A stretch of DNA of 64,000 bases from Octopus sinensis. Taxonomy: Eukaryota. Both the position numbers and the translations under genes were made by a program. The notes below the pieces were generated by a model. The model made no database searches, had not been told where the DNA came from, and saw only the letters and a list, made by a program, of their open reading frames with translations. This document shows, piece by piece, positions 6,265 through 60,366 of the stretch; the first letter of the stretch is position 1, and each line of letters starts with the position of its first letter. The stretch is from the NCBI RefSeq assembly GCF_006345805.1, contig NW_021826031.1:248001-312000 (forward strand), written 5' to 3'.

Positions 6265-7250
6265 AATTACCAACAGTTAATTAGAGTAATTAATTAGGTG
6301 ATTCCAACAATCCTAAAGATCTTTCTCTGCTTTTCCCGATGAGCTCAACGCAAGTGCAAAACTGACGGGGAACAGTTTTCGTAAGGAATTGAATCGGGGT
6401 AATGTGCTTCTGGTTGATAATTGACATATGATGGTGTTTTGACAGTTGGTCTTGTTAAATGGCTAAGAAGCCCTTTCCATCTTTCTTAATTAGGTGGTCA
6501 AGCAGACTTGGAATAATATTTTTCAAATTGGAAATTTTCATTATGCGAGCCGCAGCTCTGTATAGTGTAATCTCAATTTTAGGTCGGTTAGACCATGAGA
6601 GATTAATTCCCCATGCGGCGCAGGCATAGCCAATTGTCGGTTTGATGAATTTTTTGTAGAGAGCCGGGAACGGTTTCTTTAGTCCGCCAAATATCAATTT
6701 GATTAGTCCAATTTTTCTCTGACTGGATCCGATGGCCTTCTCTAGATGGGCAGTAAAACACATGTCAAAGTGACCCCCAGAATTTTAGGGTTCTTCGTGA
6801 ATGGGATCTTTTCGTTGTCCAGAAAAAGATCAACAGTACGCCTTCCAAGTCTCTTATCCGACGTAAATAAGGTAGTGGACGATTTTTTGGGGGAGAGGTT
6901 CATCCTGTTTTGATATAGCCAAGTTCGAATTTGTAATAAGAGATCTTGTGCTCTTTTGAAAGCTTTCAAGAGATCTTTATCACGTGATCCAATGAGTAGG
7001 TCGTCAGCGTAGGCGAGAACGAATGAGTCTTCCATTTAGGATTAGGAATATCGGATAGGCATAAATTGAAAAGAGCAAGAGAAAGGGGGGAGCCTTGGGG
7101 AACGCCATGTGGAAACAATCTTGAGATTAATTTGATTCCAATCAGGAATACACACCCTCTCCTTCCGCTGAGGAAACTAACTTAGTGACAAAGGAGTGAT
7201 GTTGGTTACTTTCTCTTCTAAAAGGAGGAGATTAACCTTCAGCGGACAAC
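6265..7250 (-). mobile_element. Non-LTR retrotransposon (I/Jockey-like) RT fragment
   Basis: HGVPQGSP, LAYADDL, MNLSPKKS, PKILGVTL, YKKFIKPTIGYACAAW; ORF ends VGIT*. Confidence 0.88.
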
Positions 7251-7980: not shown

Positions 7981-9338
<1,358 letters not shown>

Positions 9339-9373
9339 ATTATTTTTCTGTTTTATATTAATTTAGTATTAAA

Positions 9374-9986
9374 TGTGACCGGTTCATAATGAGATACGGT
9401 TGAATACGAGCCGTTAAAAAGATCGATAATTAATATACCGATTCAAAAGGCCAATTACAATAAAGGCAGACGTTCTAATCTTAACTTTAACTCTAACTAT
9501 AAATGATTTCAACGTTATTTATAAACATATTCATCATAAAAAAGACACTAAAGAAAACAGACCCTAACCCTAATCCCTGACCCTAATCCCTGACCCTAAT
9601 CCCTGACCCTGACGCTAACCCTGACGCTAACCCTGACGCTAACCCTGACGCTAACCCTGACCCTAACCCTGACCCTAACCCTGACCCTAACCCTGACCCT
9701 AACCCTGACCCTAACCCTGACCCTAACCCTGACCCTAACCCTGACCCTAACCCTAACCCTGACCCTAACCCTGACCCTAACCCTGACCCTAACCCTGACC
9801 CTAACCCTGACCCTAACCCTGACCCTAACCCTGACCCTAACCCTGACCCTAACCCTGACCCTAACCCTGACCCTAACCCTAATATGATTTAACGGCATTC
9901 ACGCCATTTAACGGCTCGTATAACGCCACTTTGACGGCTCGTATAACGGCTCGTATTCAACCTGGGCTCGTATTCAACCGGTCACA
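9374..9986. mobile_element. Non-autonomous TIR element (MITE) with TGTGAC...GTCACA ends and 5-bp TSD TTAAA
   Basis: Left TGTGACCGGTT pairs with right AACCGGTCACA; left GGTTGAATACGAGCCGTT pairs with right AACGGCTCGTATTCAACC; GGCTCGTAT subterminal repeats x4 at the right end; TTAAA at 9369-9373 and 9987-9991. Confidence 0.85.
9562..9882. repeat. Interstitial telomere-like array (CCCTAA/CCCTGA alternating)
   Basis: 3x CCCTAATCCCTGA (9568-9606), 4x CGCTAACCCTGA (9613-9660), 17x CCCTAACCCTGA (9661-9870, one extra CCCTAA), ending CCCTAACCCTAA. Confidence 0.97.
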
Positions 9987-10063
9987 TTAAATATGATGTA
10001 TTTAATTATATTTGAAATAAATATTTAAATTTGTTATTGTCCACTTGTTGACGTGAGTACATT

Positions 10064-11123
10064 ATGGACCAGTGTCAGAACAAAGTCGACTACCACGAAG
10101 AAATTTCGAGACTTCTGGCACTATGCAACAGTGATAAGTACCAGTCTCTCACACAATTCGCCGTCGAAGGGAAACTTGGAAACGGACAGTTCAGTGTAGT
10201 GCTCACTGCACGCAGTCTGCTTGATAACCAATATTATGCCCTCAAACAAGTTCAAGTAACTCTAATAACAGCACTAAATTCCTAGATATTCGAAATGACT
10301 GATGCAAAGGCTCGTTATGACTGTCTGAAGGAGGTTGAATTATTAAAAGTATTTTTTATTACATAATAAAGAAATTAAATCATCCGAATGTAATCCAACA
10401 CCACTCTTCGTTTCTTCACATGAACGATTTGATAATTGTGATGGAACTGGCCGACTGGGGCGATTTGTCCAGACTTTTGAGTGTTTGACTGATATTTTTG
10501 ATTTTTAGACATTTCGGATACAAAATAGGAAATTGGGGGAGTTTTCAATTTGGCGATATTTCCTTCAAATTTGTCAGGGATTGAACCACATGCATTCACG
10601 TAGAATAATGCACAGAGGTCGTTTTTTCCGCTTATTTATAGATATAAAGCCAGCCAATATTTATATCACTTCTGAAGGACTTGTCAAATTGGGGGACTTG
10701 GGATTAGCTCGTTATTTTCCTTCCAATTCTTCTGTGGCTCATTCTTTGGGTTTGTTGGCTTGGTTAGTGTTAGTGGGGACTCCGTATTACATGTCCCCCG
10801 AGAGGATTAGTCAGCATGGGTATGACTTTTCTTCCGATGTGTGGTCCCTGGGTTGTATTCTTTACGAGATGGCTACTTTACGGGTGCCATTTCAGCCAGA
10901 ACAGGCCAATCTGATCGCCCTCTGTCGACAGATACAACACGAGGGCTACACGCCTATGGATCCTGATATTTACTCTTCCCAGGTTGGTTATGTTGGGGAT
11001 ATTTAGATGGTCGATTTGGTGGCTTTGTGTCTCAAGAAAAACCCTCTGGAGAGACCTGGCACTTCGAACATTATTCGTATTGCACACAGAATGTATGTGA
11101 CATTGCAAAAATTAAATACTTGA
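10064..11123 (+). CDS. NEK7: NEK6/NEK7-like Ser/Thr kinase
   Basis: KLGNGQFSVV, ALKQVQ|IFEMTDAKARYDCLKEVELLK, IVMELADWGDLS, MHSRRIMHR|DIKPANIYIT, VKLGDLGLARYF, GTPYYMSPERI; a single kinase domain with no long tail. NEK6 versus NEK7 not resolved. Confidence 0.9.
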
Positions 11124-20396: not shown

Positions 20397-20830
20397 TGTG
20401 ACATGGGCGGCTGGATACGCATGGGCAACCGGTTACATTTTTGACCTTGTGATGTCAATTATTTTTTTTAATTTTTTTTCTTCACTTGAAGAATAATGCA
20501 TTTTAACAAAAAATTAAAATTAATCATTTTTCGTCTTGCCATTGGTACCGTCCATATCTCTCCTTAGCATATTTTATCTATTAAATAAAAATGATTGATT
20601 TACCTCGACTCGATTATTTGATAAAATTTTAATTATCTCAGCGGTCGGATAGAATGGAGACTCGAATTTATCCAACCGCAACGAAGGGTTTGTTCCATAA
20701 TCTTTTTTAACTCGAACCTATCTATAATTTTTTATCTAAACTTTATCTCCGACACTAGATTCGTATTTAATATTGTGGACATTCATTTTCCTATTCATTG
20801 CTTTATAGTAGGCTGAGTTTCCATCAATCG
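20397..20830 (-). mobile_element. Ginger-like element 3' end (TIR plus integrase C-terminal remnant)
   Basis: TGTGACATGGGCGG TIR at 20397; minus strand reads KYESSVGDKV.IKNYR...KFESPFYPTAEIIKILSNNRVE, like gypsy/Ginger integrase C-termini. Partner TIR not found. Confidence 0.55.
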
Positions 20831-26177: not shown

Positions 26178-26263
26178 GCCTAGCTGATCCTTGGTGTCCA
26201 AGGTACGGGCTTCAAACCCGTGGCCGGTTGACACCGGAGTGGTTCGATTCCAGTTAATGGGCG
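26178..26263 (+). tRNA. tRNA-Sec (anticodon TCA)
   Basis: Collinear with metazoan tRNA-Sec: 6-bp D stem CCTTGG/CCAAGG, 6-bp anticodon stem TACGGG/CCCGTG around CTTCAAA, long variable arm CCGGT/ACCGG, GTGG-TTCGATT-CCA T arm, 9/4 spacing, discriminator G, then TTTT. Confidence 0.88.
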
Positions 26264-28089: not shown

Positions 28090-29700
28090 CATTTTAATCA
28101 CATATTTTATCCTTATTAATTAAATGTTCCCAGGCTCGCTGAATTTGGTCAGGACTCAAATAATGTGACGAGATGATTTGTTTAAAATTACAAAAGTTTC
28201 CAGAGTATCTCACAAAATTGATTCCATTGTGGTGTATGAGACTGACATCCGTGTTCTTAATGCACATACCTGTAATATATATATGTAGCATTTCAACCCG
28301 TTATGTAAATGTCCTCAAACTTGATTATATTGGAAAAGTCACAATTTTCACAAAAGTCAAAAGTTGCAGATTTAGCCGCATATACAGTGGGATGAGATAT
28401 GTGATTCCAGTGTAGAACCACTTATCCGGTGTGTATTCACCATGGATTATCTTGACTAGTTCTTCACACAAGTGATCATGAATTGAGGTAATTTTTTAGA
28501 AAGAAATTATACACCCCATTACAACCGCTAGCTCTCCAGTTTGGGAGTTGTTTAATTATTTCAAGGATGCTTTCTTTACTAAACTCTGCAAATGTATCCT
28601 CTGCCCATGTCACTCTCTTGTTAATATGTAACACATTATCGCTCTTCTCATTTCTACTCCATATTTTTTTCCAATATGATAAACATTCACTGTTATTAAA
28701 CATAAACTCTGCACTCTTTTTTTCATCATTTAAACTGCGATAGAAACAACGCCGATTCAGTTCAAAGAACCAATTCTGTTTCCGAAATTCTTTTCTTGCA
28801 TCATGGAGTCGAAGTTTTTTCTCAACAATCTTTATTTCGTCTCCAATGCAAGCAGAAATTCTTCCAAGTTCTCCTTTCTTTGCCTTTCGATATCCATATT
28901 CACTCAGCGTATCCCTCGTTGCATTATCAAACTTCAAGCTTCCTTTTTGATCAATAAGTGTATTAGTCTGTTGGTATTGTTCTTTAAGTTTAATTAGTTT
29001 TGCTTCCATAATTCCTTTCCAGTTGTTATTCTTAGGAGAGTATTTTGTAAGAGCTTGGTATGTCAGCTGTGCAGCATAAATGATATCGGTGATATCATTC
29101 AAATTGACAGGAGGGTTGGTCTTTATATATTCATTAATCACTGCATTTATTCCAGACAATATTTTTTTTAAGTAGTTGATATGGGACTTTTTTGGTCGGC
29201 TTTCGTTTTTTTTGAGAGATAGATTTTACTTGCTCTATTCGGGAAGAAAATTCAATTGAGCAATCTCTAAAATTAGAGATCTCAGTCTTGTGATTCTTTT
29301 CTTGATCCATTGGAGAGTTAGACTTTGTTCCCGTCATCTTAGCCAGACTGTTCACGTTCGCCACAGATTTGGACGTGAGGAACTTTTCGTTAAAAGCCTG
29401 AGTAATCATAGGCCATCCACCACGTGGTATTCTTTTGAATCTTGCTCTAGAAACGTTAACCACTTCATTCGCCCATTTGATCATGTCCACCTGCGTTACT
29501 TGATCGATGATAGCCCATAGAGTTAACAGATTAGCAGGACAATCCGGTTGCAACACCGAATTTGGAGGGGGAATATCAGATTCTTGCGTTCCAAGCTGCC
29601 CACGGACCACACAATTTACGTTATTATTGGTTTCTCATTCATTATCTTTCGTAGATAGGTCCATTGGAAATGTTTCATTAATACCCAGTAGAAACAAACA
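28090..29700 (-). mobile_element. R4/Dong-like LINE, 5' region to start of RT
   Basis: RKPTKKVP, DITDIIYAAQ, ARKEFRKQNWFFELNRRCFYRSL, YWKKIW, LPNWRASGCNGVYNFFLK. Confidence 0.7.
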
Positions 29701-49964: not shown

Positions 49965-51616
49965 CAGTGGTTCTCAACCTGGGGTCCGCGAAAGATTCCA
50001 GGGGGTCCGCGAGATTTTTCTGAAACTTTATTTAATGTTTCTATTTAATGATAACAATTTTAAATTAATATATAATAGAATTAAATCATAATTAATAATA
50101 ATCATAATTAATATATTATATTATTTATTTCAGGTGGTAGAACAAATAAAAACTTCATGCCATCAAAATTTCGCTATACAAGTTGATGAATCCACCGATG
50201 TAGCGAACTGTGCTCAATTAATAATATTTGCTCGTTATGTCTATGACGGAGATTTTAAAGAGGAATTTTTATTTTCCTATTCGCTTGAATCGACCACTAA
50301 AGGAGAAGATATTTTTCAAGCAATTTCTATGTTTTTTGACAGTGTTGGGTTATCTTGGAATAATGTATGTTGTTGCACAACCGATGGAGCTCCAGCAATG
50401 CTTGGCTTTCATTCTGGCTTTAGAGACCAAGTTAGACTTGCTAACCAGGAAACGAAACATATGCATTGTATGCTACATCGATATGCACTTGCTGCAAAAA
50501 CATTACCTTCAGATTTAAGATATGTTCTCGATGATGTCGTACATATCATAATTATATTAAAAAGAGTGCTTTAAATTCGCGCATTTTCAGACTTATTTGC
50601 GAAGAATTTGAAAAGGATGGAAAGGCTTTGTTATTCCACACTGAGGTGAGATGGCTATCTCGGGGAAACATTTTTGCCAGAGTTTTTTCTTTGAGGAATG
50701 AATTATCTGAATATTTTATTCGCGAAAACAATTCCAAATCATCGGAATTTATTTCGAAATTAATGGATAGTTCATGGCTATCTAAACTTGCTTACTTGAG
50801 AGATGTCTTCTCTCGTATAAATTCACTCAACAAATCGCTTCAGGGAAGACATGAAACAATAATTGATTTTGTGGATAAAATTAAGTTTGTTAACTGTTTC
50901 ATATTAATTATTAGTGCTTTTTTGATAAAGTTAACACTGTGGAAAGAAAAAGTAAAACTAAATAATTTTACTATGTTTGAATCTTTTGAAGAACAATCTG
51001 TAAATATAGATGCATTTGAAATCAAAAAAATAACCGAACTTATTTATGCACATTTAACATATCTAAAACAAGAAGTAAATAAATACTTTCCAGAATTGAA
51101 CGAAATTGATTTGAAATTCATTCGTACACCATTCAGTGTTGATCCACGTTTGGTCGATGAAAATATCGAAGAGGCTTTTATTGACATGATCAATAATTCA
51201 AACGCAAGAGATTTGTATGAAAAACTTGCTTTATCAAGATTTGAGTGCGAAATGTGTAAGCATTATCCTTCCGTAAGCGCAAATGCATTAAATTTGTTGC
51301 TTATATTCCCGACAACATATTTATGCGAACATGGCTTCTCAGCACTTCTCAATATAAAAAATAATCATCGCGCAAGACTGAATATTGAAGATGACATCAG
51401 GGTTTGCTTGTCGACAACCGAGCCTCTTATTGAAAAATTGCCTCGAAAAAACAATATCAACCTTCTCACTAATTTTCTCTATTGATTTAATAATAAATTT
51501 TGTTTTTAGATAAGTAAAATTTTTTTGACAAACAACTTAATAAATATGTAGGGGGTCCGCGAAATTTTTCATTTACTAACAAGGGGTCCGCGGACAAAAA
51601 AGGTTGAGAACCACTG
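49965..51616 (+). mobile_element. Buster-type hAT (5'-deleted transposase)
   Basis: Perfect 15-bp TIR CAGTGGTTCTCAACC; TSD GCTTAAGG (49957-49964, 51617-51624); FAIQVDESTD, TTDGAPAM, HCMLHR, LFHTEVRWLSRG, FPTTYLCEHGFS. Confidence 0.95.
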
Positions 51617-52173: not shown

Positions 52174-53844
52174 TAGGGCAACCAAAAGTCATATAAGTCA
52201 TATTATTTTTTATTGGTCATATTGATGTTATTTCTATAATTAATAAACTATTATTATATTTTTTAATAGTTTTATTAATTTTTTTAGGTCTTATAGGTCA
52301 TATTTTATGCCGTTAGGTCATATTATTTTTTTATGTCATATTTTTTTTGTCAGGTCATATTTATATTTATTAAATCATATATTTTTATTAATCTTTGTTT
52401 AAATTTTGACAATAACACGTTTTCACACGTTTTGGTAGTTGGCCGCTTAAATATTATAGATTTTTACATGCCGAAACAAAAGCAATCTAACAATCAAAAG
52501 TTAAATAAAATAATTAAACGATACCCGTCTGAATTTCAGATTGATTCAGCCGGACGTTTATTTTGTTTGAAATGCTCAGTTTTTGTTAATTTTACGAAAA
52601 CGTTTAATGTGGTGCAGCACAGGGAAACTACCCGGCATAAAAAGGAACAGACAAAATTTCAAACGCAACTCAACACTCCTCCGAAACTTGAAGCAAAGAA
52701 AAATTTCGGAATTTGCTTAGTCGAAATGATGACGAAGGCGAATATACCTTTTTACAAAATAAGAAATGAACACTTTATTAATTTTTTTAATAATCTCGGA
52801 TTTACTGTTCCCAGCGAAAGTTGGTGCAGAAATATAGTTCCAGATTTGCAATATCAATTGATTGAAATGCTTAAAACAATTATGATATAAAAAGGGAAAA
52901 TTTTTTATTATTTATTTCTGATGCTGCCCGTTATATGACTTTAGCAGCGAGTACATTGAAGGTTATGTATATTAAAATGATTCATATAACTTGTTTTGCT
53001 CATCTTCTGCACAATTGTGCATTAAAGATTAGAGCACATTATAAATATATTGACGACTTAATCTTGTCTATCAAAATGTCGATTGTAAAAAATCCCTCCC
53101 GGAGGAGTCTTTTTACAGTTATTGGACTTCCACCTGATGTTGTTCTAACAAGATGGGGCAGCTGGTCGGACGCAGCAAAATATTATAGTCGACATCTTTC
53201 AAGAGTTCGCGAAATTGTCTTATCCTATCCAAATTGTGGAAAGATTGTGATGAATGCGAAAAATGCTGTTAGCTCTGAAAATTTGGAGAAAAATCTGGCA
53301 GAGTTAATGGCTTCATACAACCCTATTATTGATGAAATCAGAAAATGCCAAGAAAAATTTTATACAATTAAAGATGCAATTGAATTCATTGATTCCGTTA
53401 ATTTTGGTGAGGATAATTGTGACATCAACAAGTATTTTTTAAAGCGGATAAGTATGTTACCATGGACGAATATTAAAAATGCTAGAATTTCTAGTATTTC
53501 TCCAGAAACATTTATTTACTTATGGAAATGTCCTTCAACATCAATATCTGCAGAAAGAAGCTTTTCTATGCTGAATAAATTGCTCGAAAAGGATAGAAAC
53601 TTCAAGCCAGAAAATATTAAATATTATATGATGCAATATTATAATAAATTCATTGATTGAAATGTTTAATTTTTTCATATTTTCAAATTCAGAATATCTA
53701 AAAATCAAAATTCGATAGGTCATATTTTGATTTTTTAGGTCATATTTTAATATTTTTAAGTTATATTTTAGAATTTTAAAGTCATAAAGTCATATTTTTT
53801 ACGGTCATATTTAACTTTTTAAGGTCATATTTCTGGTTGCCCTA
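52174..53844 (+). mobile_element. hAT with CGGBP1-like transposase (internally deleted)
   Basis: TIR TAGGGCAACC / GGTTGCCCTA; TSD CTGATCAC (52166-52173, 53845-53852); GGTCATATT subterminal repeats; RLFCLKC...VVQHRETTRH zinc finger, ANIPFYKI, SDAA.YM, IHITCFAHLLH, TRWGSW, STSISAERSFS. Confidence 0.9.
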
Positions 53845-54648: not shown

Positions 54649-54684
54649 CACACCCACATTCAAATTGTTACAAACCAGATCAAT

Positions 54685-55718
54685 AAAAAAATTATTTTCT
54701 GCGTTTTTGTTAAAATGAACAACAAGAAAGTCCTCGACTCACATGATGTGGTCCCCCAAAACCTTCAAGGTAAAAATTAAAAAAATTATTTTCTGCGTTT
54801 TTGTTAAAATGAACAACAAGAAAGTCCTCGACTCACATGATGTGGTCCCCCAAAACTTCAAGCAAAAAATTAAAAAAAATTATTTTCTGCGTTTTTGTTA
54901 AAATAACAACAAGAAAGTCCTCGACTCACATGATGTGGTCCCCCAAAACCTTCAAGCCAAAAATTAAAAAAAATTATTTTCTGCGTTTTTGTTAAATGAA
55001 CAACAAGAAAGTCCTCGACTCACATGATGTGGTCCCCCAAAACTTTCAAGCCAAAAAATTAAAAAAATTATTTTCTGCGTTTTTGTTAAAATGAACAACA
55101 AGAAAGTCCTCGACTCACATGATGTGGTCCCCCAAAACCTTCAAGCCAAAAATTAAAAAAATTATTTTCTGCGGTTTGTTAAAATGAACAACAAGAAAGT
55201 CCTCGACTCACATGATGTGGTCCCCCAAAACCTTCAAGCCAAAAAATTAAAAAAATTATTTTCTGCGTTTTTGTTAAAATGAACAACAAGAAAGTCCTCG
55301 ACTCACATGATGTGGTCCCCCAAAACCTTCAAGCCAAAAAATTAAAAAAAATTATTTTCTGCGTTTTTGTTAAAATGAACAACAAGAAAGTCCTCGACTC
55401 ACATGATGTGGTCCCTCAAAACCTTCAAGCCAAAAAATTAAAAAAATTATTTTCTGCGTTTTTGTTAAAATGAACAACAAGAAAGTCCTCGACTCACATG
55501 ATGTGGTCCCTCAAAACCTTCAAGCCAAAAAATTAAAAAAAATTATTTTCTGCGTTTTTGTTAAATGAACAACAAGAAAGTCCTCGACTCACATGATGTG
55601 GTCCCCCAAAACCTTCAAGCCCAAAAATTAAAAAAAAAATATTTTCTGCGTTTTTGTTAAAATGAACGACAAGAAAGTCCTCGACTCACATGATGAGGTC
55701 CTCCACAACCTTCAAGCC
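54685..55718. repeat. Tandem array, 11 units of 93-97 bp
   Basis: TCCTCGACTCAC recurs at 54731, 54825, 54918, 55012, 55107, 55200, 55295, 55391, 55486, 55581 and 55678; length variation lies mainly in A/T runs. Confidence 0.97.
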
Positions 55719-57634
55719 TCGTGAGGCCATTAATTAGCTTAGCTATCTTTTTTCGATGACATAAATTCTTTTTTGTTAAATTTTCGTTAAAAAAATAAAA
55801 TAAAAGCTCTAATTGTTATCGACCATGAATAGACTGTGCAATTATCAGATTTTGAAAACCACTAAAAAGGAAAAAGCAAAAATTATTAGAGATTTACATA
55901 ATTGATTCTTTTTAACTGCCGAAACTGACAAATTCGATTATGCTACTGTTTAGATTTCTTAAAAGATAGAGGCAAATAAAATTTAAATTAGTCATGTAAA
56001 TTTCAATTTGCCTATATTTAAATCTCCTTGATTTAACAGGCTTTAATTTTTTTCCTTATAATACTACAAAGATGAAGCTGATTATCATTTTCTTTACCGA
56101 AACAGACAAGTTCGATTATGCTAAAGTTTCAATTCCTTTAAACATAGAGGCAATTAAGTATAATGGCTTTGATTGGATAATACACTTTACATAAATTTCA
56201 CTAAATAAATTTACGTAGAAAATTTAATATAAATTACTGATTCGCGTTTACAAAATCATAAGCATGTCCTATAAAGAGAGATCTGAGAATGTTAACAAAC
56301 AAGAGAATATGAACCATATAACAAAAAAAGAGAAACGAGGGAAGATGTGCTTAAATGGTGAGGGAACTTAGACAACAGCTGAACAAGGTCAGGACTGCTG
56401 TTAGACTCAACTACGGGTAATAGAATTATGCATTCTAGGTTAATTGTTTGGGATGAATGTACGATGGCTCATAAAGGCGCATTCAAGCAGTTGACCGAAC
56501 ATATAGAGATATCAAGAATTGTAGCGACCATTTGTTTGGGGGAGCATTAGTTGTATTGGCAGGTGATTTTAGACAGACGCTGCCAATTATTCAAAGAGGG
56601 ACGCCTGCGGATGAATTGAATGCCTGCCTCAAATCGTCATATTTGTGGACACACGTGAAAAAGGTAAGCTTAGATGTAAATGTACATGCACATTTACAAG
56701 GCGTTAATAGCATATTCCCACAAATCCCTCTAGATATTGGAAATGGGGCAATCACTTCAGAAATGCACGACCAGAAAATTAGGCTACCGGAAGAATTATG
56801 TATTTTCGTAGAAACAGCAGAAGAATTATTGAATGCCGTCTATTCCGAACTATCTGAACACTACGTGAATTTCGACTGGCTGCGTGAACGAGCTATATCA
56901 GCTCCACTTAATGATGAGGTACTTAATATAAATTTAGATTTATTAATGAAAATCCCTGGCAGAGAAAGAATATATAAATCGGTCGACGTTATTATGGACC
57001 ATGAAAGGGCCTGCGATAGATTTAAGAGACTACAATTTCCGCTGAAGATAAGTTTTGCTATGACAATAAACAAGGCCCAGGGACAGTCTTTAAAGGTAGT
57101 AGGCTTATTTTTAGAGAACGAGTGCTTTTCACATGGCCAGCTGTATGTGGGGTGCTCAAGGGTAGGTAGAAGAGAAATTTATTTATATTTGCCAAGGATG
57201 GACGGACTGCAAACATCGTTTATCCACAGGCCTTAGAATAAGGTTATATCAAAGCAGGTCGCATTTATATATCTACATAAATTTATAGTTATTTAAGGAA
57301 ACTGCGAGCGTAGCGAGCAGGGCCTCCGCAGGAGCTAGCTCGCAGTGAGCGAAGCGAACTGCTGAGCTAGTGGATATCTAAAATGGGTTGTTTTGGAGTA
57401 CATAGGTCTTGTGGAATGGTTTGAGAGAGTCCTAAGAATTACTACTTTGGGGGACCACTTTGATGAGACAGTCCTTGACTGACTTATAATCCATATAGCG
57501 TGCCTTTGTGGGTAATGTGAGGCTGCAGTTCTTCAAATTAATTTTTTGACTTTTTTACATTGATTGAACTTGTCTAGTCTGCTCTGAAAATTGAGTTTGT
57601 TGTCCTGGTAGTGCTGGATGGCCTTGGAGGCCGG

Positions 57635-60366
57635 ATGCTATTTGTGTCAGTCGTGCTATTCCTTGCTCTGTTTTGACAAAAGTGGCAATAAAATCGGGAA
57701 TTTTGTGACTTATGCAGAGTCTGACTTTGTTCTTTGATTTTTTATTATTTTTTAAGGAAAATGTTTTTATTTTAATTGATCCAAGTTCGTTTACTAGAAC
57801 ATTAAAGTCAGCTTGTTTATGAAAGGTCGTGTAACTATGAATTAAGCATATTTTTAGTCTGTTGTTGTATGGAAAGAAGTTGATTTACTAGGAAATCTGA
57901 TCTTTGCTGTTTTAGAAGAATGCATTAATTCTTTAAAAATTTCTGTAAGGATGGATTAGTATCTCTATATTAGTGTATGTAAAAAGGGATTCGAAATGTT
58001 TGAGATCAAACGGGTGGATACGGTCATTTCGCTTGAAGGAAAAATCGTAAAACACAGTTATTTAAGTACCATAGGTAAAACTGAGCCATAGAATTTACCG
58101 AGCAATAAAATTTTTAAAATGAAAAGATCATTAAAAAAAATCATTAAATTGTTGTTCTTTTTTAATTAATTTATACGTTCGAGTAAATTCATTTTGATAA
58201 AAAAGGATTTCAATTTTTAAAGTACAGTAAAGTCTCTCGAATTCGCCAATTTCGGGGATCGGCAAAATCTGGCGGATTCGAAAGACTTATCGATTTTTTA
58301 ATCCATTAATAATTTAAATTATAAACTTTATTAATTTTTTTTTAAATAAAAATAACCAATAACTACAAGTTAATTAATTAAAAGCTTCAAGGGCGGGAAG
58401 CCGACGCGATCGAGAAAGAGTTAGAGCGTACTATCGCAAGGGATATCCGCTCGAAAAACCATCTCGATTCGCGGGCGTCGCCTGTGATGGCAGACATGCG
58501 GGACCCGATCTCCTGATTTAAATTATTAAGCCAAAATAATTAATTAAAAACAAAAAAATCAGTAAGTTTCGACTTGTTTCTTCTTAGAGTTTGGATCATT
58601 GAAGATCCAATGTTTTCAATATACTCAAGATTTTCTATATTAAAGAATTTAGCTTTATAGCCAGATTTAATGGTTTTACAAACACTCTTAGACGGTATCA
58701 TTTTGTAAAATAAGCCAGTTTCATCGGCATTATAAACATTTTGAGCTCCGTAAAGACTGATTTTATTTTTGATTAATTCAATGAAATCTGATACTAAATT
58801 AGGGTCAAAATTTCGAGTTGCAGATTCTCCATGCATATTACGTAATTTCAAACCATTCCTCTTTTTAAATTTAACTAACCACCCTTTGCTTCCTTTGAAT
58901 TCAGTAATCCCGAGATTCAATGCAAAGGCTTTTGCTTTCTCAGTAATAATCCTATCATTTAAAATGGCTCCTTTAAGATCCATTGAATTGACCCAAGCAA
59001 TAGTATTATCATCGATTTCAGCAAACTTTAAATATTGTTTGCGGGAAATTTCAGATCTTAGGTTATGAAACATAATGTTAGATCCTCTTTTAATTTTCAG
59101 ATCATCAATAGATCGGCGAGAAACAGGCAAGTTGTATTTTTTTGAAAAAATCTCAGAAATTTTGAGTGAAGATAATTCATTATTTGTTTGAATAAACTTC
59201 AAAATCTCAATTTTTTGATTGTTTTTTAGTCTTGTACAGTTACGTTTCATTAATACAACAACAAAGACAGATGTAACGTGTTAATAAATTGATTATATAT
59301 CAGTAAATTTAATTAAAAAAATTATTTAAAATTAGGACACATGGCGGATTCATTATAAAAAATATGGCGGATTCGAGAATTTGGCGGATTCGAGAATTTT
59401 TTCTAGGAAAAATGGCGGATAAGAGAATTTATTAATTATAATTGGCGGATTCGAGGGTATGGCGGATTCGAGAGACTTTACTGTATTTTGAATGTTTTTT
59501 TCGAATTTACAAGAGAATTTGTTCTTTTAAGTTCTATTCTCATCATCAATGGTTAAAAAACCAGAATGACTATTAAAGTAGTCGCCATTTCATTTAATTC
59601 CGCCAATTTTTGAATTGATGAATTTATTTTGATCAACTAAAATTATTTAAAAATTAAAACCTATTTTTAATTATTTTTTGGCAGACACTTTTAGAAAAGA
59701 CAGATTTATAGAAATTCGATTTAACCACAAAATATTTTAAATATCCAAATCCTTAAAATATTATGTCACAAGCCAATAAAAAATATTGAAATTTCAAAAT
59801 TGAGATTAATAAACTTAATTAAAATTGGGTTTTTTAATTTTCATACGGTAAAAATGACCATCTTTTCTAATCTTGATGTTTTTTATTTTATGAAATTTAA
59901 ATATTTGTGCAAAAAATACATTTGTATAAAAATGGACAAATTTCTGATTATTTTATAAAGCTTCGTAGATTAAATTTGAAAATAGATCCTAACTTATAAC
60001 AGGAAACTAATAAAAAGAATAAAAATAAGAACACACGTTAAAAATCATAATATTCTACTTTGAAAGTTCATTAAATAAATCAAATTTTCTTAACTTCCAA
60101 CGGCTTCTCTACAAATAACCCCAACCCAAAACCATTTCCTCGTTTTCTGTGAGCGTGTTTAAACGCACTCCCCGACTTGAGTGCCTCCAACAAACTCTCC
60201 ATGATCCCCTCATTCGCATCATACTTACTAAAAGTCGCCTTCCGCTTGTTAAGCGAGTTCTTCCTACGATTCTCATTCTCCTTACGCTGATTGATCTCGT
60301 CCACCGTGTCCTTAAAAATGCCACAAAATGAAAACCTTAAACTGCTTACTGAATTTAGCAATCGAC
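57635..60366 (+). repeat. Segmental duplication copy 2 (partner 42076-44397)
   Basis: Starts inside the last SNAPC3 exon (CYLCQSCYSLLCFD) and runs into the intact formin gene. Confidence 0.92.
58225..59483 (-). mobile_element. Tigger/pogo element (internally deleted)
   Basis: TIR CAGTAAAGTCTCTCGAAT.CGCCA, TA on both sides; empty site AAAGTATTTTG in copy 1 (about 42918-42928); CENP-B HTH, FKGSKGWLVKFKKR, VYNADETGLFYKMIP; GGCGGATTCGAG subterminal repeats. Confidence 0.95.

What the first reader, a model, noticed from the sequence alone, without database searches (positions are those of the whole stretch)
9374..9986. Telomere-repeat-bearing transposon: ordered TTAGGG/TCAGGG array inside a TIR element
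The 321-bp array is enclosed by TIRs and a 5-bp TSD, so it is cargo of a mobile element rather than a fusion scar. It alternates strictly canonical and variant hexamers and is zoned (13-mer, then CGCTAA variant, then pure 12-mer). The variants lie at the end that would be distal in a real telomere, the opposite of normal polarity. On the G strand, GGGTCA half-sites form DR6 (12-mer), DR7 (13-mer) and DR0 spacings, the types reported for NR2C/F nuclear-receptor binding at human ALT telomeres. Dicyemids are reported to undergo chromatin elimination and to carry circular DNAs. A mobile telomere seed or breakage and healing mark, analogous to ciliate telomere-bearing elements, is therefore a testable hypothesis (inference).
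Basis: partly seen in the sequence, partly recalled or inferred. Interest (0 to 1): 0.8.

Follow-up and report, generated by a model that had tools for sequence, protein, structure and literature searches.

The report
Transposon carrying a telomere-like repeat array
A 613-base mobile-element copy sitting between two ordinary genes carries a 321-base run of telomere-type repeats in its middle; it looks like a small transposon with an expanded internal minisatellite, and nothing testable here shows that it acts as a chromosome end.

Summary
Window 9374-9986 is a 613-bp unit with perfect 11-bp terminal inverted repeats (TGTGACCGGTT), imperfect 43-50-bp arms and GGCTCGTAT subterminal repeats. A duplicated AT-rich target flanks it. 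Its core (9562-9882, 321 bp) is 53 telomere-type units: TTAGGG alternating with TCAGGG, plus two blocks of variants.

- The alternation has four breaks.
- The duplication length is ambiguous (2 to 7 bp).
- There is no exact DR0 of GGGTCA.

The most likely reading is a non-autonomous cut-and-paste transposon inserted in the roughly 110-bp spacer between a queuine tRNA-ribosyltransferase gene and a kinase gene. Its internal array looks like a 12-bp-unit minisatellite grown by slippage or unequal exchange, not by telomerase.

The "not a fusion scar" reading is supported. The "mobile telomere seed / breakage mark" idea is untested and mildly disfavoured: the array is internal, runs one way, and has its variants at the would-be distal end.

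No second copy could be found. The source genome is absent from every searchable collection, so I cannot tell whether the array is family cargo or a one-locus expansion. The organism fits a dicyemid but is not proven. Moderate interest.

The parts
9369..9373 (.). Left copy of the duplicated target (TTAAA; the maximal direct repeat is ATTAAAT, 9368-9374). It coincides with a variant poly(A) signal, ATTAAA, 30 nt after the upstream gene's stop codon.
   Evidence: Read from sequence; direct repeat D5; control for inverted repeat plus duplication.
9374..9416 (+). Left terminal inverted repeat arm: 11 perfect bases TGTGACCGGTT, then a 12-nt divergent stretch, then CGGTTGAATACGAGCC (one inverted copy of the subterminal motif GGCTCGTAT).
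9417..9561 (.). AT-rich unique internal segment. It includes five tandem hexamers at 9474-9503 (TCTAAT CTTAAC TTTAAC TCTAAC TATAAA) that may be decayed CCTAAC units on the same strand as the main array (weak).
   Evidence: TRF score 30 at 9481-9502; weak blast matches of this stretch to telomere-like arrays in metagenome loci.
9562..9882 (-). Telomere-like array, G-rich strand on the minus strand. 53 units; the basic unit is the 12-mer TTAGGG+TCAGGG. Variant blocks: ATTAAGGG-type 13-mers x3 at 9568-9606 and TTAGCG x4 within 9613-9654. One extra TTAGGG at 9745-9756. 49 GGG tracts and 11 non-overlapping G4 motifs.
9883..9943 (.). Right internal/subterminal segment with a 23-bp direct repeat (x2.1) that carries two GGCTCGTAT motifs.
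   Evidence: TRF 9901-9948; family D2.
9944..9986 (-). Right terminal inverted repeat arm: two copies of GGCTCGTATTCAACC, then the terminal AACCGGTCACA.
9987..9991 (.). Right copy of the duplicated target (TTAAA; maximal ATTAAAT, 9986-9992).
7981..9338 (+). Upstream neighbour: queuine tRNA-ribosyltransferase (QTRT1/TGT) gene with 23-28-bp GT-AG introns. Its stop codon at 9336-9338 is 35 bp before the element.
   Evidence: Pfam TGT hit, 6.1e-23; the spliced protein is 55-59% identical to mollusc and insect QTRT1; introns read from sequence.
10064..11006 (+). Downstream neighbour: Ser/Thr protein kinase gene. Its ATG at 10064 is 78 bp after the element.
   Evidence: ORF list; Pfam Pkinase hit, 6e-31.

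Best explanation
Window 9374-9986 is one copy of a small non-autonomous cut-and-paste DNA transposon (MITE-like, no coding capacity).

Inferred mechanism. A transposase or integrase supplied in trans would recognise the 11-bp termini and the GGCTCGTAT subterminal repeats. The element inserted into an AT-rich site (ATTAAAT) in the roughly 110-bp spacer between a QTRT1 gene and a kinase gene, and duplicated 2-7 bp of target.

The array. The central 321 bp is a telomere-like minisatellite whose real unit is the 12-mer TTAGGG+TCAGGG. After a single T-to-C change in a short TTAGGG seed, it grew by replication slippage or unequal exchange in 12/13-bp register. This explains the contiguous blocks of identical variant units and the single 6-bp phase slip. 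The array is interstitial and, as far as the sequence shows, passive: a G4-prone, recombination-prone tract carried or grown inside a transposon, not a working telomere.

Shown: the anatomy of ends, duplication and array; the intergenic position; the absence of coding capacity and of any known RNA family.

Inferred: mobility in trans, the slippage history, and passivity.

Unknown: the superfamily, the copy number, and whether other copies carry the array.
For: - Perfect 11-bp inverted termini, unique in 64 kb.
- 50-nt arms at 82% complementarity, with a 16/16 block at equal offset in both arms.
- The subterminal motif GGCTCGTAT occurs 4+1 times here and nowhere else exactly.
- A flanking direct repeat sits directly against the termini.
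- The inverted-repeat-plus-duplication signature is found only here and at two textbook hAT-like elements with 8-bp duplications (49965-51616 and 52174-53844). Simulated sequence gives 0.053 per window.
- No ORF of at least 20 aa other than repeat-frame artefacts, and no Rfam match.
- Array period 12, 27 copies; variants occur as contiguous blocks of 3 and 4 identical units; one 6-bp phase slip.
- Genes lie 35 bp upstream and 78 bp downstream on the same contiguous sequence.
- Tandem-repeat-containing MITEs with ordered variant arrays and an attached microsatellite are documented in bivalves (PMC3879986).
Against: - Only one copy was seen, so mobility is inferred from anatomy alone.
- No second copy in the window, only a doubtful 41-bp relic at 20397-20437.
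- No autonomous partner or matching transposase in the window.
- The duplication length, and hence the superfamily, is undetermined.
- The species' true telomere motif is unknown. A telomerase that makes a 12-nt unit cannot be excluded.
- The sequencing platform is unknown, and nanopore basecallers are known to miscall telomere-type repeats (PMC9414165), although not in the pattern seen here.
Confidence: 0.68

Rival explanations
1. Functional telomere seed or breakage-and-healing mark. The element delivers a ready-made telomeric tract. Programmed or accidental breakage next to the tract lets the fragment be capped.
For: - The G-rich strand runs 5'->3' toward lower coordinates. A break left of 9562 would leave the kinase-side fragment with a correctly oriented terminal G-strand (reading of the sequence).
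- Dicyemids are reported to undergo chromatin elimination and to make circular DNAs (PMC6543705, citing Noto et al. 2003 and Awata et al. 2006).
- The tract is long (321 bp) and very homogeneous.
Against: - The locus is continuous in the assembly, with intact genes on both sides.
- The array is internal, not terminal, within the element, and is present once in one orientation. This is unlike ciliate telomere-bearing elements.
- Variant units occupy the would-be distal end.
- The block-wise 12/13-bp variant pattern indicates slippage, not telomerase.
- No read-level, stage-level or copy-level data could be obtained.
- The organism's identity and telomere motif are unverified.
- The same paper questions whether circles are actually diminished (PMC6543705, section 6).
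Confidence: 0.04
2. Solo LTR of an LTR retrotransposon that acquired an internal minisatellite. The fit rests on TG...CA termini, a 5-bp duplication and a length of about 600 bp.
For: - Termini are 5'-TG...CA-3' and the start TGTGA fits the TGTNR pattern of Gypsy LTRs (PMC2836005).
- Reverse-transcriptase fragments exist in the window, for example 6742-7118.
Against: - The inverted similarity extends over 43-50 nt, with a repeated subterminal motif in inverted orientation on both sides. This is typical of DNA transposons, not LTRs.
- No matching LTR or internal region elsewhere in the window.
Confidence: 0.08
3. The repeats were put in by telomerase during repair of a double-strand break inside a pre-existing element (a classic short interstitial telomeric insertion) and only later expanded. 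In this reading the transposon is an accidental host, not a carrier.
For: - Telomerase-mediated insertion at breaks is an accepted origin of short interstitial telomeric sequences (PMC6410037).
- Cut-and-paste elements are break-prone.
- Pure TTAGGG dimers remain at both array ends (9562-9573 and 9871-9882).
Against: - It cannot be told apart from an ancestral seed with one copy.
- The possible decayed hexamer tract at 9474-9503 would suggest that telomere-like units are older than the present array.
Confidence: 0.15
4. The fine pattern (TCAGGG alternation, 13-mers, TTAGCG) is partly a basecalling or assembly artefact laid over a plain (TTAGGG)n interstitial tract.
For: Nanopore basecallers systematically miscall telomere-type repeats, including length changes of TCAGGG-type units (PMC9414165). 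The sequencing platform of this window is unknown.
Against: - The reported artefacts are TTAAAA, CTTCTT, CCCTGG and 5/7-mer collapses, not a regular CCCTAA/CCCTGA alternation.
- The zones are sharply bounded, and the flanks are clean.
- Two other transposons in the window have perfect duplications, which argues for good consensus quality.
Confidence: 0.05
5. The array is a regulatory module brought by the element: an array of direct-repeat hormone-response half-sites (GGGTCA, DR6) or a G4 block acting on the adjacent kinase promoter or on 3'-end formation of the upstream gene.
For: - 21 exact GGGTCA half-sites, 16 of them with DR6 spacing.
- The element lies 78 bp from the kinase ATG. Its target duplication is an ATTAAA poly(A)-type signal 30 nt after the QTRT1 stop codon.
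- NR2C/F receptors bind TCAGGG repeats in human ALT cells (PMC6410037, PMC7691514).
Against: - No evidence that this organism has such receptors.
- No expression data.
- The half-site periodicity is an automatic by-product of the 12-mer.
Confidence: 0.03

Closest known systems
Tandem-repeat-containing MITEs of bivalves (DTC84 of Donax trunculus; 'pearl' elements of Crassostrea virginica), PMC3879986
   Same: Short non-coding element bounded by inverted repeats and a short target duplication. The centre is a tandem array whose variant units sit in a fixed order, with a simple-repeat segment at one end of the array. The host is a lophotrochozoan-type genome.
   Different: Here the array is made of telomere-type hexamers (12-bp unit), not roughly 160-bp core repeats. 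There is no sequence similarity. The duplication is not AA. Only one copy is known.
Ciliate telomere-bearing transposons (Tetrahymena Tel-1; Oxytricha TBE1). Cherry & Blackburn 1985 as cited in PMC2831315; the rest from general knowledge.
   Same: A transposon-like element that contains the telomeric repeat of a eukaryote at an internal chromosomal site.
   Different: In the ciliate elements the telomeric repeats are at the extreme termini, in inverted orientation, as part of the ends. Here there is a single internal, unidirectional block 188 bp and 104 bp from the ends, and the termini are unrelated to telomeric sequence.
Interstitial telomeric sequences of vertebrates (short and heterochromatic ITS), PMC6410037
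   Same: Telomere-type repeats away from chromosome ends, amplified by slippage or unequal exchange, often next to transposons. Transposition by mobile elements is one proposed route.
   Different: Here the enclosing element is defined to the base by its inverted repeats and duplication. The unit is a regular TTAGGG/TCAGGG dimer rather than degenerate TTAGGG.
Ginger2/Tdd DNA transposons (Gypsy-integrase-related), PMC2836005
   Same: Termini fit TGTNR (TGTGA) and TG...CA. Inverted repeats are about 50 bp. The duplication is 4-5 bp in an AT-rich target, under the 5-bp reading.
   Different: No integrase is available to test. The preferred target RTATAY is not matched. The duplication could equally be TA with a 16-bp inverted repeat (Tc1/mariner-like) or TAA. 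This is a lead only.
Variant-repeat (TCAGGG) tracts of human ALT telomeres bound by NR2C/F receptors, PMC6410037 and PMC7691514
   Same: TCAGGG units interspersed with TTAGGG create GGGTCA half-sites.
   Different: The ALT tracts are at real telomeres and are irregular. Here the alternation is regular, interstitial and inside a transposon. No receptor or binding data exist for this organism.
Telomere-repeat-tipped retroelements (Penelope-like Athena/Terminon-type elements), as summarised in PMC4522978
   Same: Mobile elements that carry species-specific telomeric repeats.
   Different: Those are reverse-transcriptase elements with a few repeats at the 3' end, which are used to prime on chromosome ends. 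Here the element is a non-coding inverted-repeat element with a long internal array.

Membership tests
Class II (cut-and-paste, TIR) non-autonomous transposon / MITE | Terminal inverted repeats | tested here: met
   11/11 perfect; 50 nt at 82%.
Class II (cut-and-paste, TIR) non-autonomous transposon / MITE | Target-site duplication directly abutting the termini | tested here: met
   TTAAA / ATTAAAT direct repeat. This signature is rare in simulated sequence. The length is ambiguous, 2-7 bp.
Class II (cut-and-paste, TIR) non-autonomous transposon / MITE | Multiple dispersed copies in the genome / an empty site | not testable with these tools
   The source genome is absent from the protein and DNA collections. 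No second copy in the window.
Class II (cut-and-paste, TIR) non-autonomous transposon / MITE | No transposase of its own; small size | tested here: met
   613 bp; only repeat-frame ORFs.
Tandem-repeat-containing MITE (pearl/DTC84 kind) | Central tandem array with ordered variants, flanked by inverted-repeat-bearing arms | tested here: met
   Array zones; arms; definition from PMC3879986.
Tandem-repeat-containing MITE (pearl/DTC84 kind) | Sequence relatedness, AA duplication, roughly 160-bp core repeats | tested here: not met
   The unit is 12 bp and telomere-like. The duplication is not AA. This is an analogy of design, not membership.
Ciliate-type telomere-bearing element | Telomeric repeats at both element termini in inverted orientation | tested here: not met
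   The termini are TGTGACCGGTT. There is a single internal array in one orientation.
Ginger2/Tdd | TGTNR termini | tested here: met
   TGTGA at both ends; feature from PMC2836005.
Ginger2/Tdd | 4-bp (metazoan) or 5-bp (TDD-4/5) duplication; RTATAY target preference | tested here: inconclusive
   A 5-bp TTAAA or 4-bp TTAA reading is possible, but 2, 3 and 7 bp are too. RTATAY is not present at the site.
Ginger2/Tdd | Gypsy-like integrase in autonomous copies sharing the termini | not testable with these tools
   No rve/integrase ORF in the window. The genome is not searchable.
hAT | 8-bp target-site duplication | tested here: not met
   The flanking 8-mers differ (GTATTAAA vs TTAAATAT). The two hAT-like elements in the same window do show exact 8-bp duplications.
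True telomere or telomere-fusion scar | Terminal position, or head-to-head arrays with degenerate repeats proximal | tested here: not met
   Internal to a gene-dense contig; one orientation; variants at the would-be distal end; enclosed by inverted repeats and a duplication.
True telomere or telomere-fusion scar | Same motif as the species' chromosome ends | not testable with these tools
   No chromosome ends or reads are available. The dicyemid genome papers do not mention telomeres.

The most novel reading that the evidence does not exclude
In an animal reported to eliminate chromatin and to make circular DNAs, a family of small transposons spreads ready-made telomere tracts through gene-dense DNA. 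Programmed breakage or excision at these elements then yields fragments that are capped from the internal TTAGGG/TCAGGG array, or circles that are tethered through it. A related possibility is that the species' telomerase itself makes the 12-nt TTAGGGTCAGGG unit.
Probability: 0.04. Interest if true: 0.9.

Novelty: new variant of a known kind. Interest (0 to 1): 0.4.

Why it matters
If the array proves to be family cargo, this would be a base-resolved animal example of a DNA transposon moving telomere-type repeats to internal sites. That route has long been proposed for interstitial telomeric sequences but is rarely shown at sequence level. It would also give a handle on telomere biology in a phylum where nothing about telomeres or transposon families has been published (the two dicyemid genome papers I read do not mention either). 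If it is a one-locus expansion, it is an ordinary minisatellite inside a MITE, of interest mainly as a fragile, G4-prone tract wedged into a 110-bp intergenic spacer.

Tried and rejected
1. Looked for other copies through proteins. I translated the array-specific frames (LGSG and PNPD) and searched the 5.8-billion-protein set. This returned only low-complexity proline/asparagine-rich proteins and no alternating arrays. One capped search was wasted.

2. Exact look-ups of four window ORFs: the RV-repeat ORF, the innexin exon, a hAT-like ORF and a pogo-like ORF. None is on record.

3. The innexin exon search found nothing at E<=1e-10, not even itself. The spliced QTRT1 found only 55-59% relatives. 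The source genome is therefore not in the collections, and copy number cannot be assessed.

4. Scanned metagenome and prokaryote genome collections for the 22-nt right terminus: 0 hits.

5. Window-internal searches for the termini, the subterminal motif and the unique arms found no second copy. A 41-bp island at 20397-20437 resembles both termini, but 10 of 300 shuffles score as well, so I did not count it.

6. Rfam: nothing in 9300-10100.

7. Pfam on 28 ORFs: no integrase or transposase that could be the partner.

8. Rejected the fusion-scar and mis-assembly readings, because the orientation is single and the flanks match across the array.

9. Rejected hAT membership, because there is no 8-bp duplication.

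10. The metagenome hits to (TTAGGGTCAGGG)x3 are GC-rich marine eukaryote contigs with no flank similarity to this element. They are not relatives.

11. The motifs that Zverkov et al. report as specific to dicyemid circles are only in figures, so I could not compare them.

Full report
**What is there**

Reading 9000-10400 directly and running Tandem Repeats Finder confirm a 321-bp array of telomere-type hexamers. My own parse places it at 9562-9882. It resolves 53 units on the + strand: CCCTGA x25, CCCTAA x21, CGCTAA x4 and CCCTAAT x3. The G-rich strand (TCAGGG/TTAGGG) is therefore the minus strand.

The layout:
- A CCCTAA, then (CCCTAAT CCCTGA)x3.
- An extra CCCTGA, then (CGCTAA CCCTGA)x4.
- (CCCTAA CCCTGA)x7, then a lone CCCTAA.
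- (CCCTAA CCCTGA)x10, then two CCCTAA.

The alternation is thus regular but broken four times. The longest perfect run is 10 twelve-mers. TTAGGGTTAGGG with one mismatch occurs 40 times in the window, all here, against 0.16 expected.

**The envelope**

- TGTGACCGGTT occurs exactly twice in 64 kb, at 9374-9384 and inverted at 9976-9986.
- The arms pair over 50 nt at 82%. A 16/16 block, CGGTTGAATACGAGCC, sits at the same distance from each end.
- The motif GGCTCGTAT is present four times in the right arm and once, inverted, in the left arm. It occurs nowhere else exactly.
- TTAAA abuts both termini. The full direct repeat is ATTAAAT and overlaps the last base of each end (family D5).
- The target is a near-palindromic AT run. 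One copy therefore cannot separate a duplication of TAA, TTAA, TTAAA or ATTAAAT from a TA duplication with a 16-bp inverted repeat carrying one mismatch.

As a control, I scanned the window for outermost perfect 11-mer inverted pairs with at least 45% G+C, 50-3000 bp apart, and with a flanking duplication of at least 5 bp. Three were found. They are this element and two obvious hAT-like elements with exact 8-bp duplications: 49965-51616 (GCTTAAGG) and 52174-53844 (CTGATCAC). Second-order Markov simulations give 0.053 per window. The envelope is therefore real. The assembly also preserves transposon boundaries cleanly.

**Context**

The element lies in a 725-bp spacer.
- Upstream is a queuine tRNA-ribosyltransferase gene. 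It has a Pfam TGT hit. Its introns of 23-28 bp were read. The spliced product is 55-59% identical to mollusc and insect QTRT1. Its stop codon is at 9336-9338.
- Downstream is a Ser/Thr kinase gene starting at 10064.
- Without the element the spacer would be about 110 bp.
- The duplicated target is itself an ATTAAA poly(A)-type signal 30 nt after the stop codon. The duplication leaves one copy on each side.
- The element has no ORF apart from repeat-frame artefacts, and no Rfam match.

**What organism**

The evidence:
- An innexin exon.
- Ultra-short GT-AG introns.
- About 35% G+C.
- Best QTRT1 hits to protostomes.

This fits a dicyemid. Dicyema japonicum has 36.7% G+C, 49% repeats and tiny introns (PMC6736024). 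Only dicyemids and myxobolid cnidarians are reported to have such introns among animals (PMC13644364). I could not confirm it, because the genome is not in any searchable collection. Neither dicyemid genome paper mentions telomeres, telomerase or DNA transposon families.

**How it most likely works**

The anatomy is that of a non-autonomous cut-and-paste transposon: inverted termini, subterminal repeats that would serve as transposase binding sites, a target duplication, and no coding capacity.

The array's real period is 12 (13 in one zone). Its variants form contiguous blocks of identical units: three 13-mers and four TTAGCG-containing 12-mers. There is also one 6-bp phase slip. That is the signature of replication slippage or unequal exchange on a dimeric unit. 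It is not the signature of hexamer-by-hexamer synthesis by a TTAGGG telomerase.

Several points argue against a relic telomere or a mis-join:
- The variants lie at the 3' end of the G-strand, which is the wrong end for a relic telomere.
- The array has one orientation.
- The left and right flanks are tied together by the inverted repeats and the duplication.

A five-unit stretch at 9474-9503 (TCTAAT CTTAAC TTTAAC TCTAAC TATAAA) could be an older tract of the same repeat, decayed by C-to-T changes. The evidence is weak.

**Superfamily**

Under the 5-bp reading, the TG...CA / TGTNR termini, the roughly 50-bp inverted repeats and the AT-rich target resemble Ginger2/Tdd elements (PMC2836005). They also resemble a solo LTR, although long inverted arms with inverted subterminal repeats argue against an LTR. 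Under the TA reading, the element would be Tc1/mariner-like. No integrase or matching transposase is present in the window. I leave it unclassified.

**Attempts to find relatives**

- The 22-nt right terminus has no exact match in JGI metagenomes or in 185,579 prokaryote genomes.
- A protein-level trick using the array-specific reading frames gave only low-complexity noise.
- The generic pattern (TTAGGGTCAGGG)x3 does occur in at least 120 marine metagenome contigs. These are GC-rich (median 0.64), have irregular mixtures of variants with only 3-7 strictly alternating units, and share no flank similarity with this element. Short TTAGGG/TCAGGG alternation is thus not unique, but a 27-unit regular array inside an inverted-repeat element has no counterpart in what I could search.

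**Comparison with known systems**

- The design matches the tandem-repeat-containing MITEs of bivalves: arms with inverted repeats framing an ordered array plus a simple repeat (PMC3879986). It shares no sequence or unit size with them.
- It is a concrete instance of the proposal that mobile elements can transpose telomeric repeats to internal sites (PMC6410037).
- It fails the defining feature of ciliate telomere-bearing elements, whose telomeric repeats form the element termini (Cherry & Blackburn 1985, as cited in PMC2831315).
- The nuclear-receptor arithmetic is largely right: exact GGGTCA x21, with DR6 x16 and DR7 x2. There is no exact DR0, and the periodicity follows automatically from the 12-mer. 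Binding of NR2C/F to TCAGGG is documented only for human ALT cells (PMC6410037, PMC7691514).

**Caveats**

- There is one copy only.
- The telomere motif of the species is unknown.
- The sequencing platform is unknown. Nanopore basecallers do distort telomere-type repeats, though not in this pattern (PMC9414165).

**Verdict**

'Transposon-borne, not a fusion scar' is supported. 'Cargo of a family' and 'telomere seed / breakage mark' remain untested, and the second is mildly disfavoured by the anatomy. This is a new variant of a known kind (a tandem-repeat-bearing MITE, or an interstitial telomeric tract) of moderate interest. It would rise sharply only if genome-wide copies or read-level data tie it to chromosome breakage, or if the species' telomeres turn out to use the 12-mer.

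Noticed in passing
L009 701-783; L083 978-1018; L055 1429-1531; L026 1023-1070 (and 67 more arrays in L001-L120): In GC-rich marine metagenome contigs fetched with (TTAGGGTCAGGG)x3, TRF finds 274 internal telomere-like arrays. 71 of them are flanked by exact direct repeats of 12-38 bp, against 0.07% for shuffled flank pairs. 78 of 120 contigs have arrays that start right after CTGG (a splice-donor-like G|GT). This looks like a distinct, recurrent way of inserting telomere-type repeats with long target duplications, possibly intron-associated, in a marine alga. It is unrelated to the window's element.
   Followed up: partly
window 49965-51616 and 52174-53844: Two hAT-like elements with perfect 8-bp target duplications (GCTTAAGG; CTGATCAC) and 11-15-bp inverted termini (CAGTGGTTCTCAACC; TAGGGCAACCA). 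Each carries an ORF with a weak hAT dimerisation-domain hit.
   Followed up: partly
window 20397-20437: A 41-bp GC-rich island in an AT-rich spacer, TGTGAC...AACCGGTTACA. It resembles the two termini of the element (one mismatch in the right end) with no clear duplication. It may be a heavily deleted relative or chance: 10 of 300 shuffles align as well.
   Followed up: partly
window 9474-9503: Five in-phase hexamers, TCTAAT CTTAAC TTTAAC TCTAAC TATAAA, inside the element and about 60 bp left of the main array. Each differs from CCTAAC mostly by C-to-T. Possibly an old, decayed tract of the same repeat.
   Followed up: partly
window 9368-9373 and 9986-9991: The duplicated target is ATTAAA, a variant poly(A) signal, 30 nt after the QTRT1 stop codon. 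The insertion therefore left one copy upstream of the element and one copy 73 bp before the kinase ATG.
   Followed up: no
window 54684-55718: A 95-bp satellite, 10.9 copies at 96% identity (also readable as a 188-bp dimer). It sits next to a PIF1-like helicase ORF (56532-57236) and a Tc5/pogo DNA-binding-domain ORF (58540-59250), in a transposon-rich stretch at 48-60 kb.
   Followed up: no
window 26178-26262 (+): A selenocysteine tRNA gene (Rfam RF01852, 56.6 bits). It is the only Rfam match in the window at gathering threshold.
   Followed up: no
window 6742-7118 (-), 28476-29159 (-): Fragments of non-LTR-type reverse transcriptase (YADD motif; Pfam RVT_1 just below cut-off) just upstream of the QTRT1 gene. 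A further retroelement-like ORF has no Pfam hit.
   Followed up: no
window 9240-9338: The last QTRT1 exon needs a +1 frame change between ...SDFLI and [21 protein letters not shown] to reach the conserved C-terminus. This is either an unrecognised very short intron or a one-base error in the sequence.
   Followed up: no
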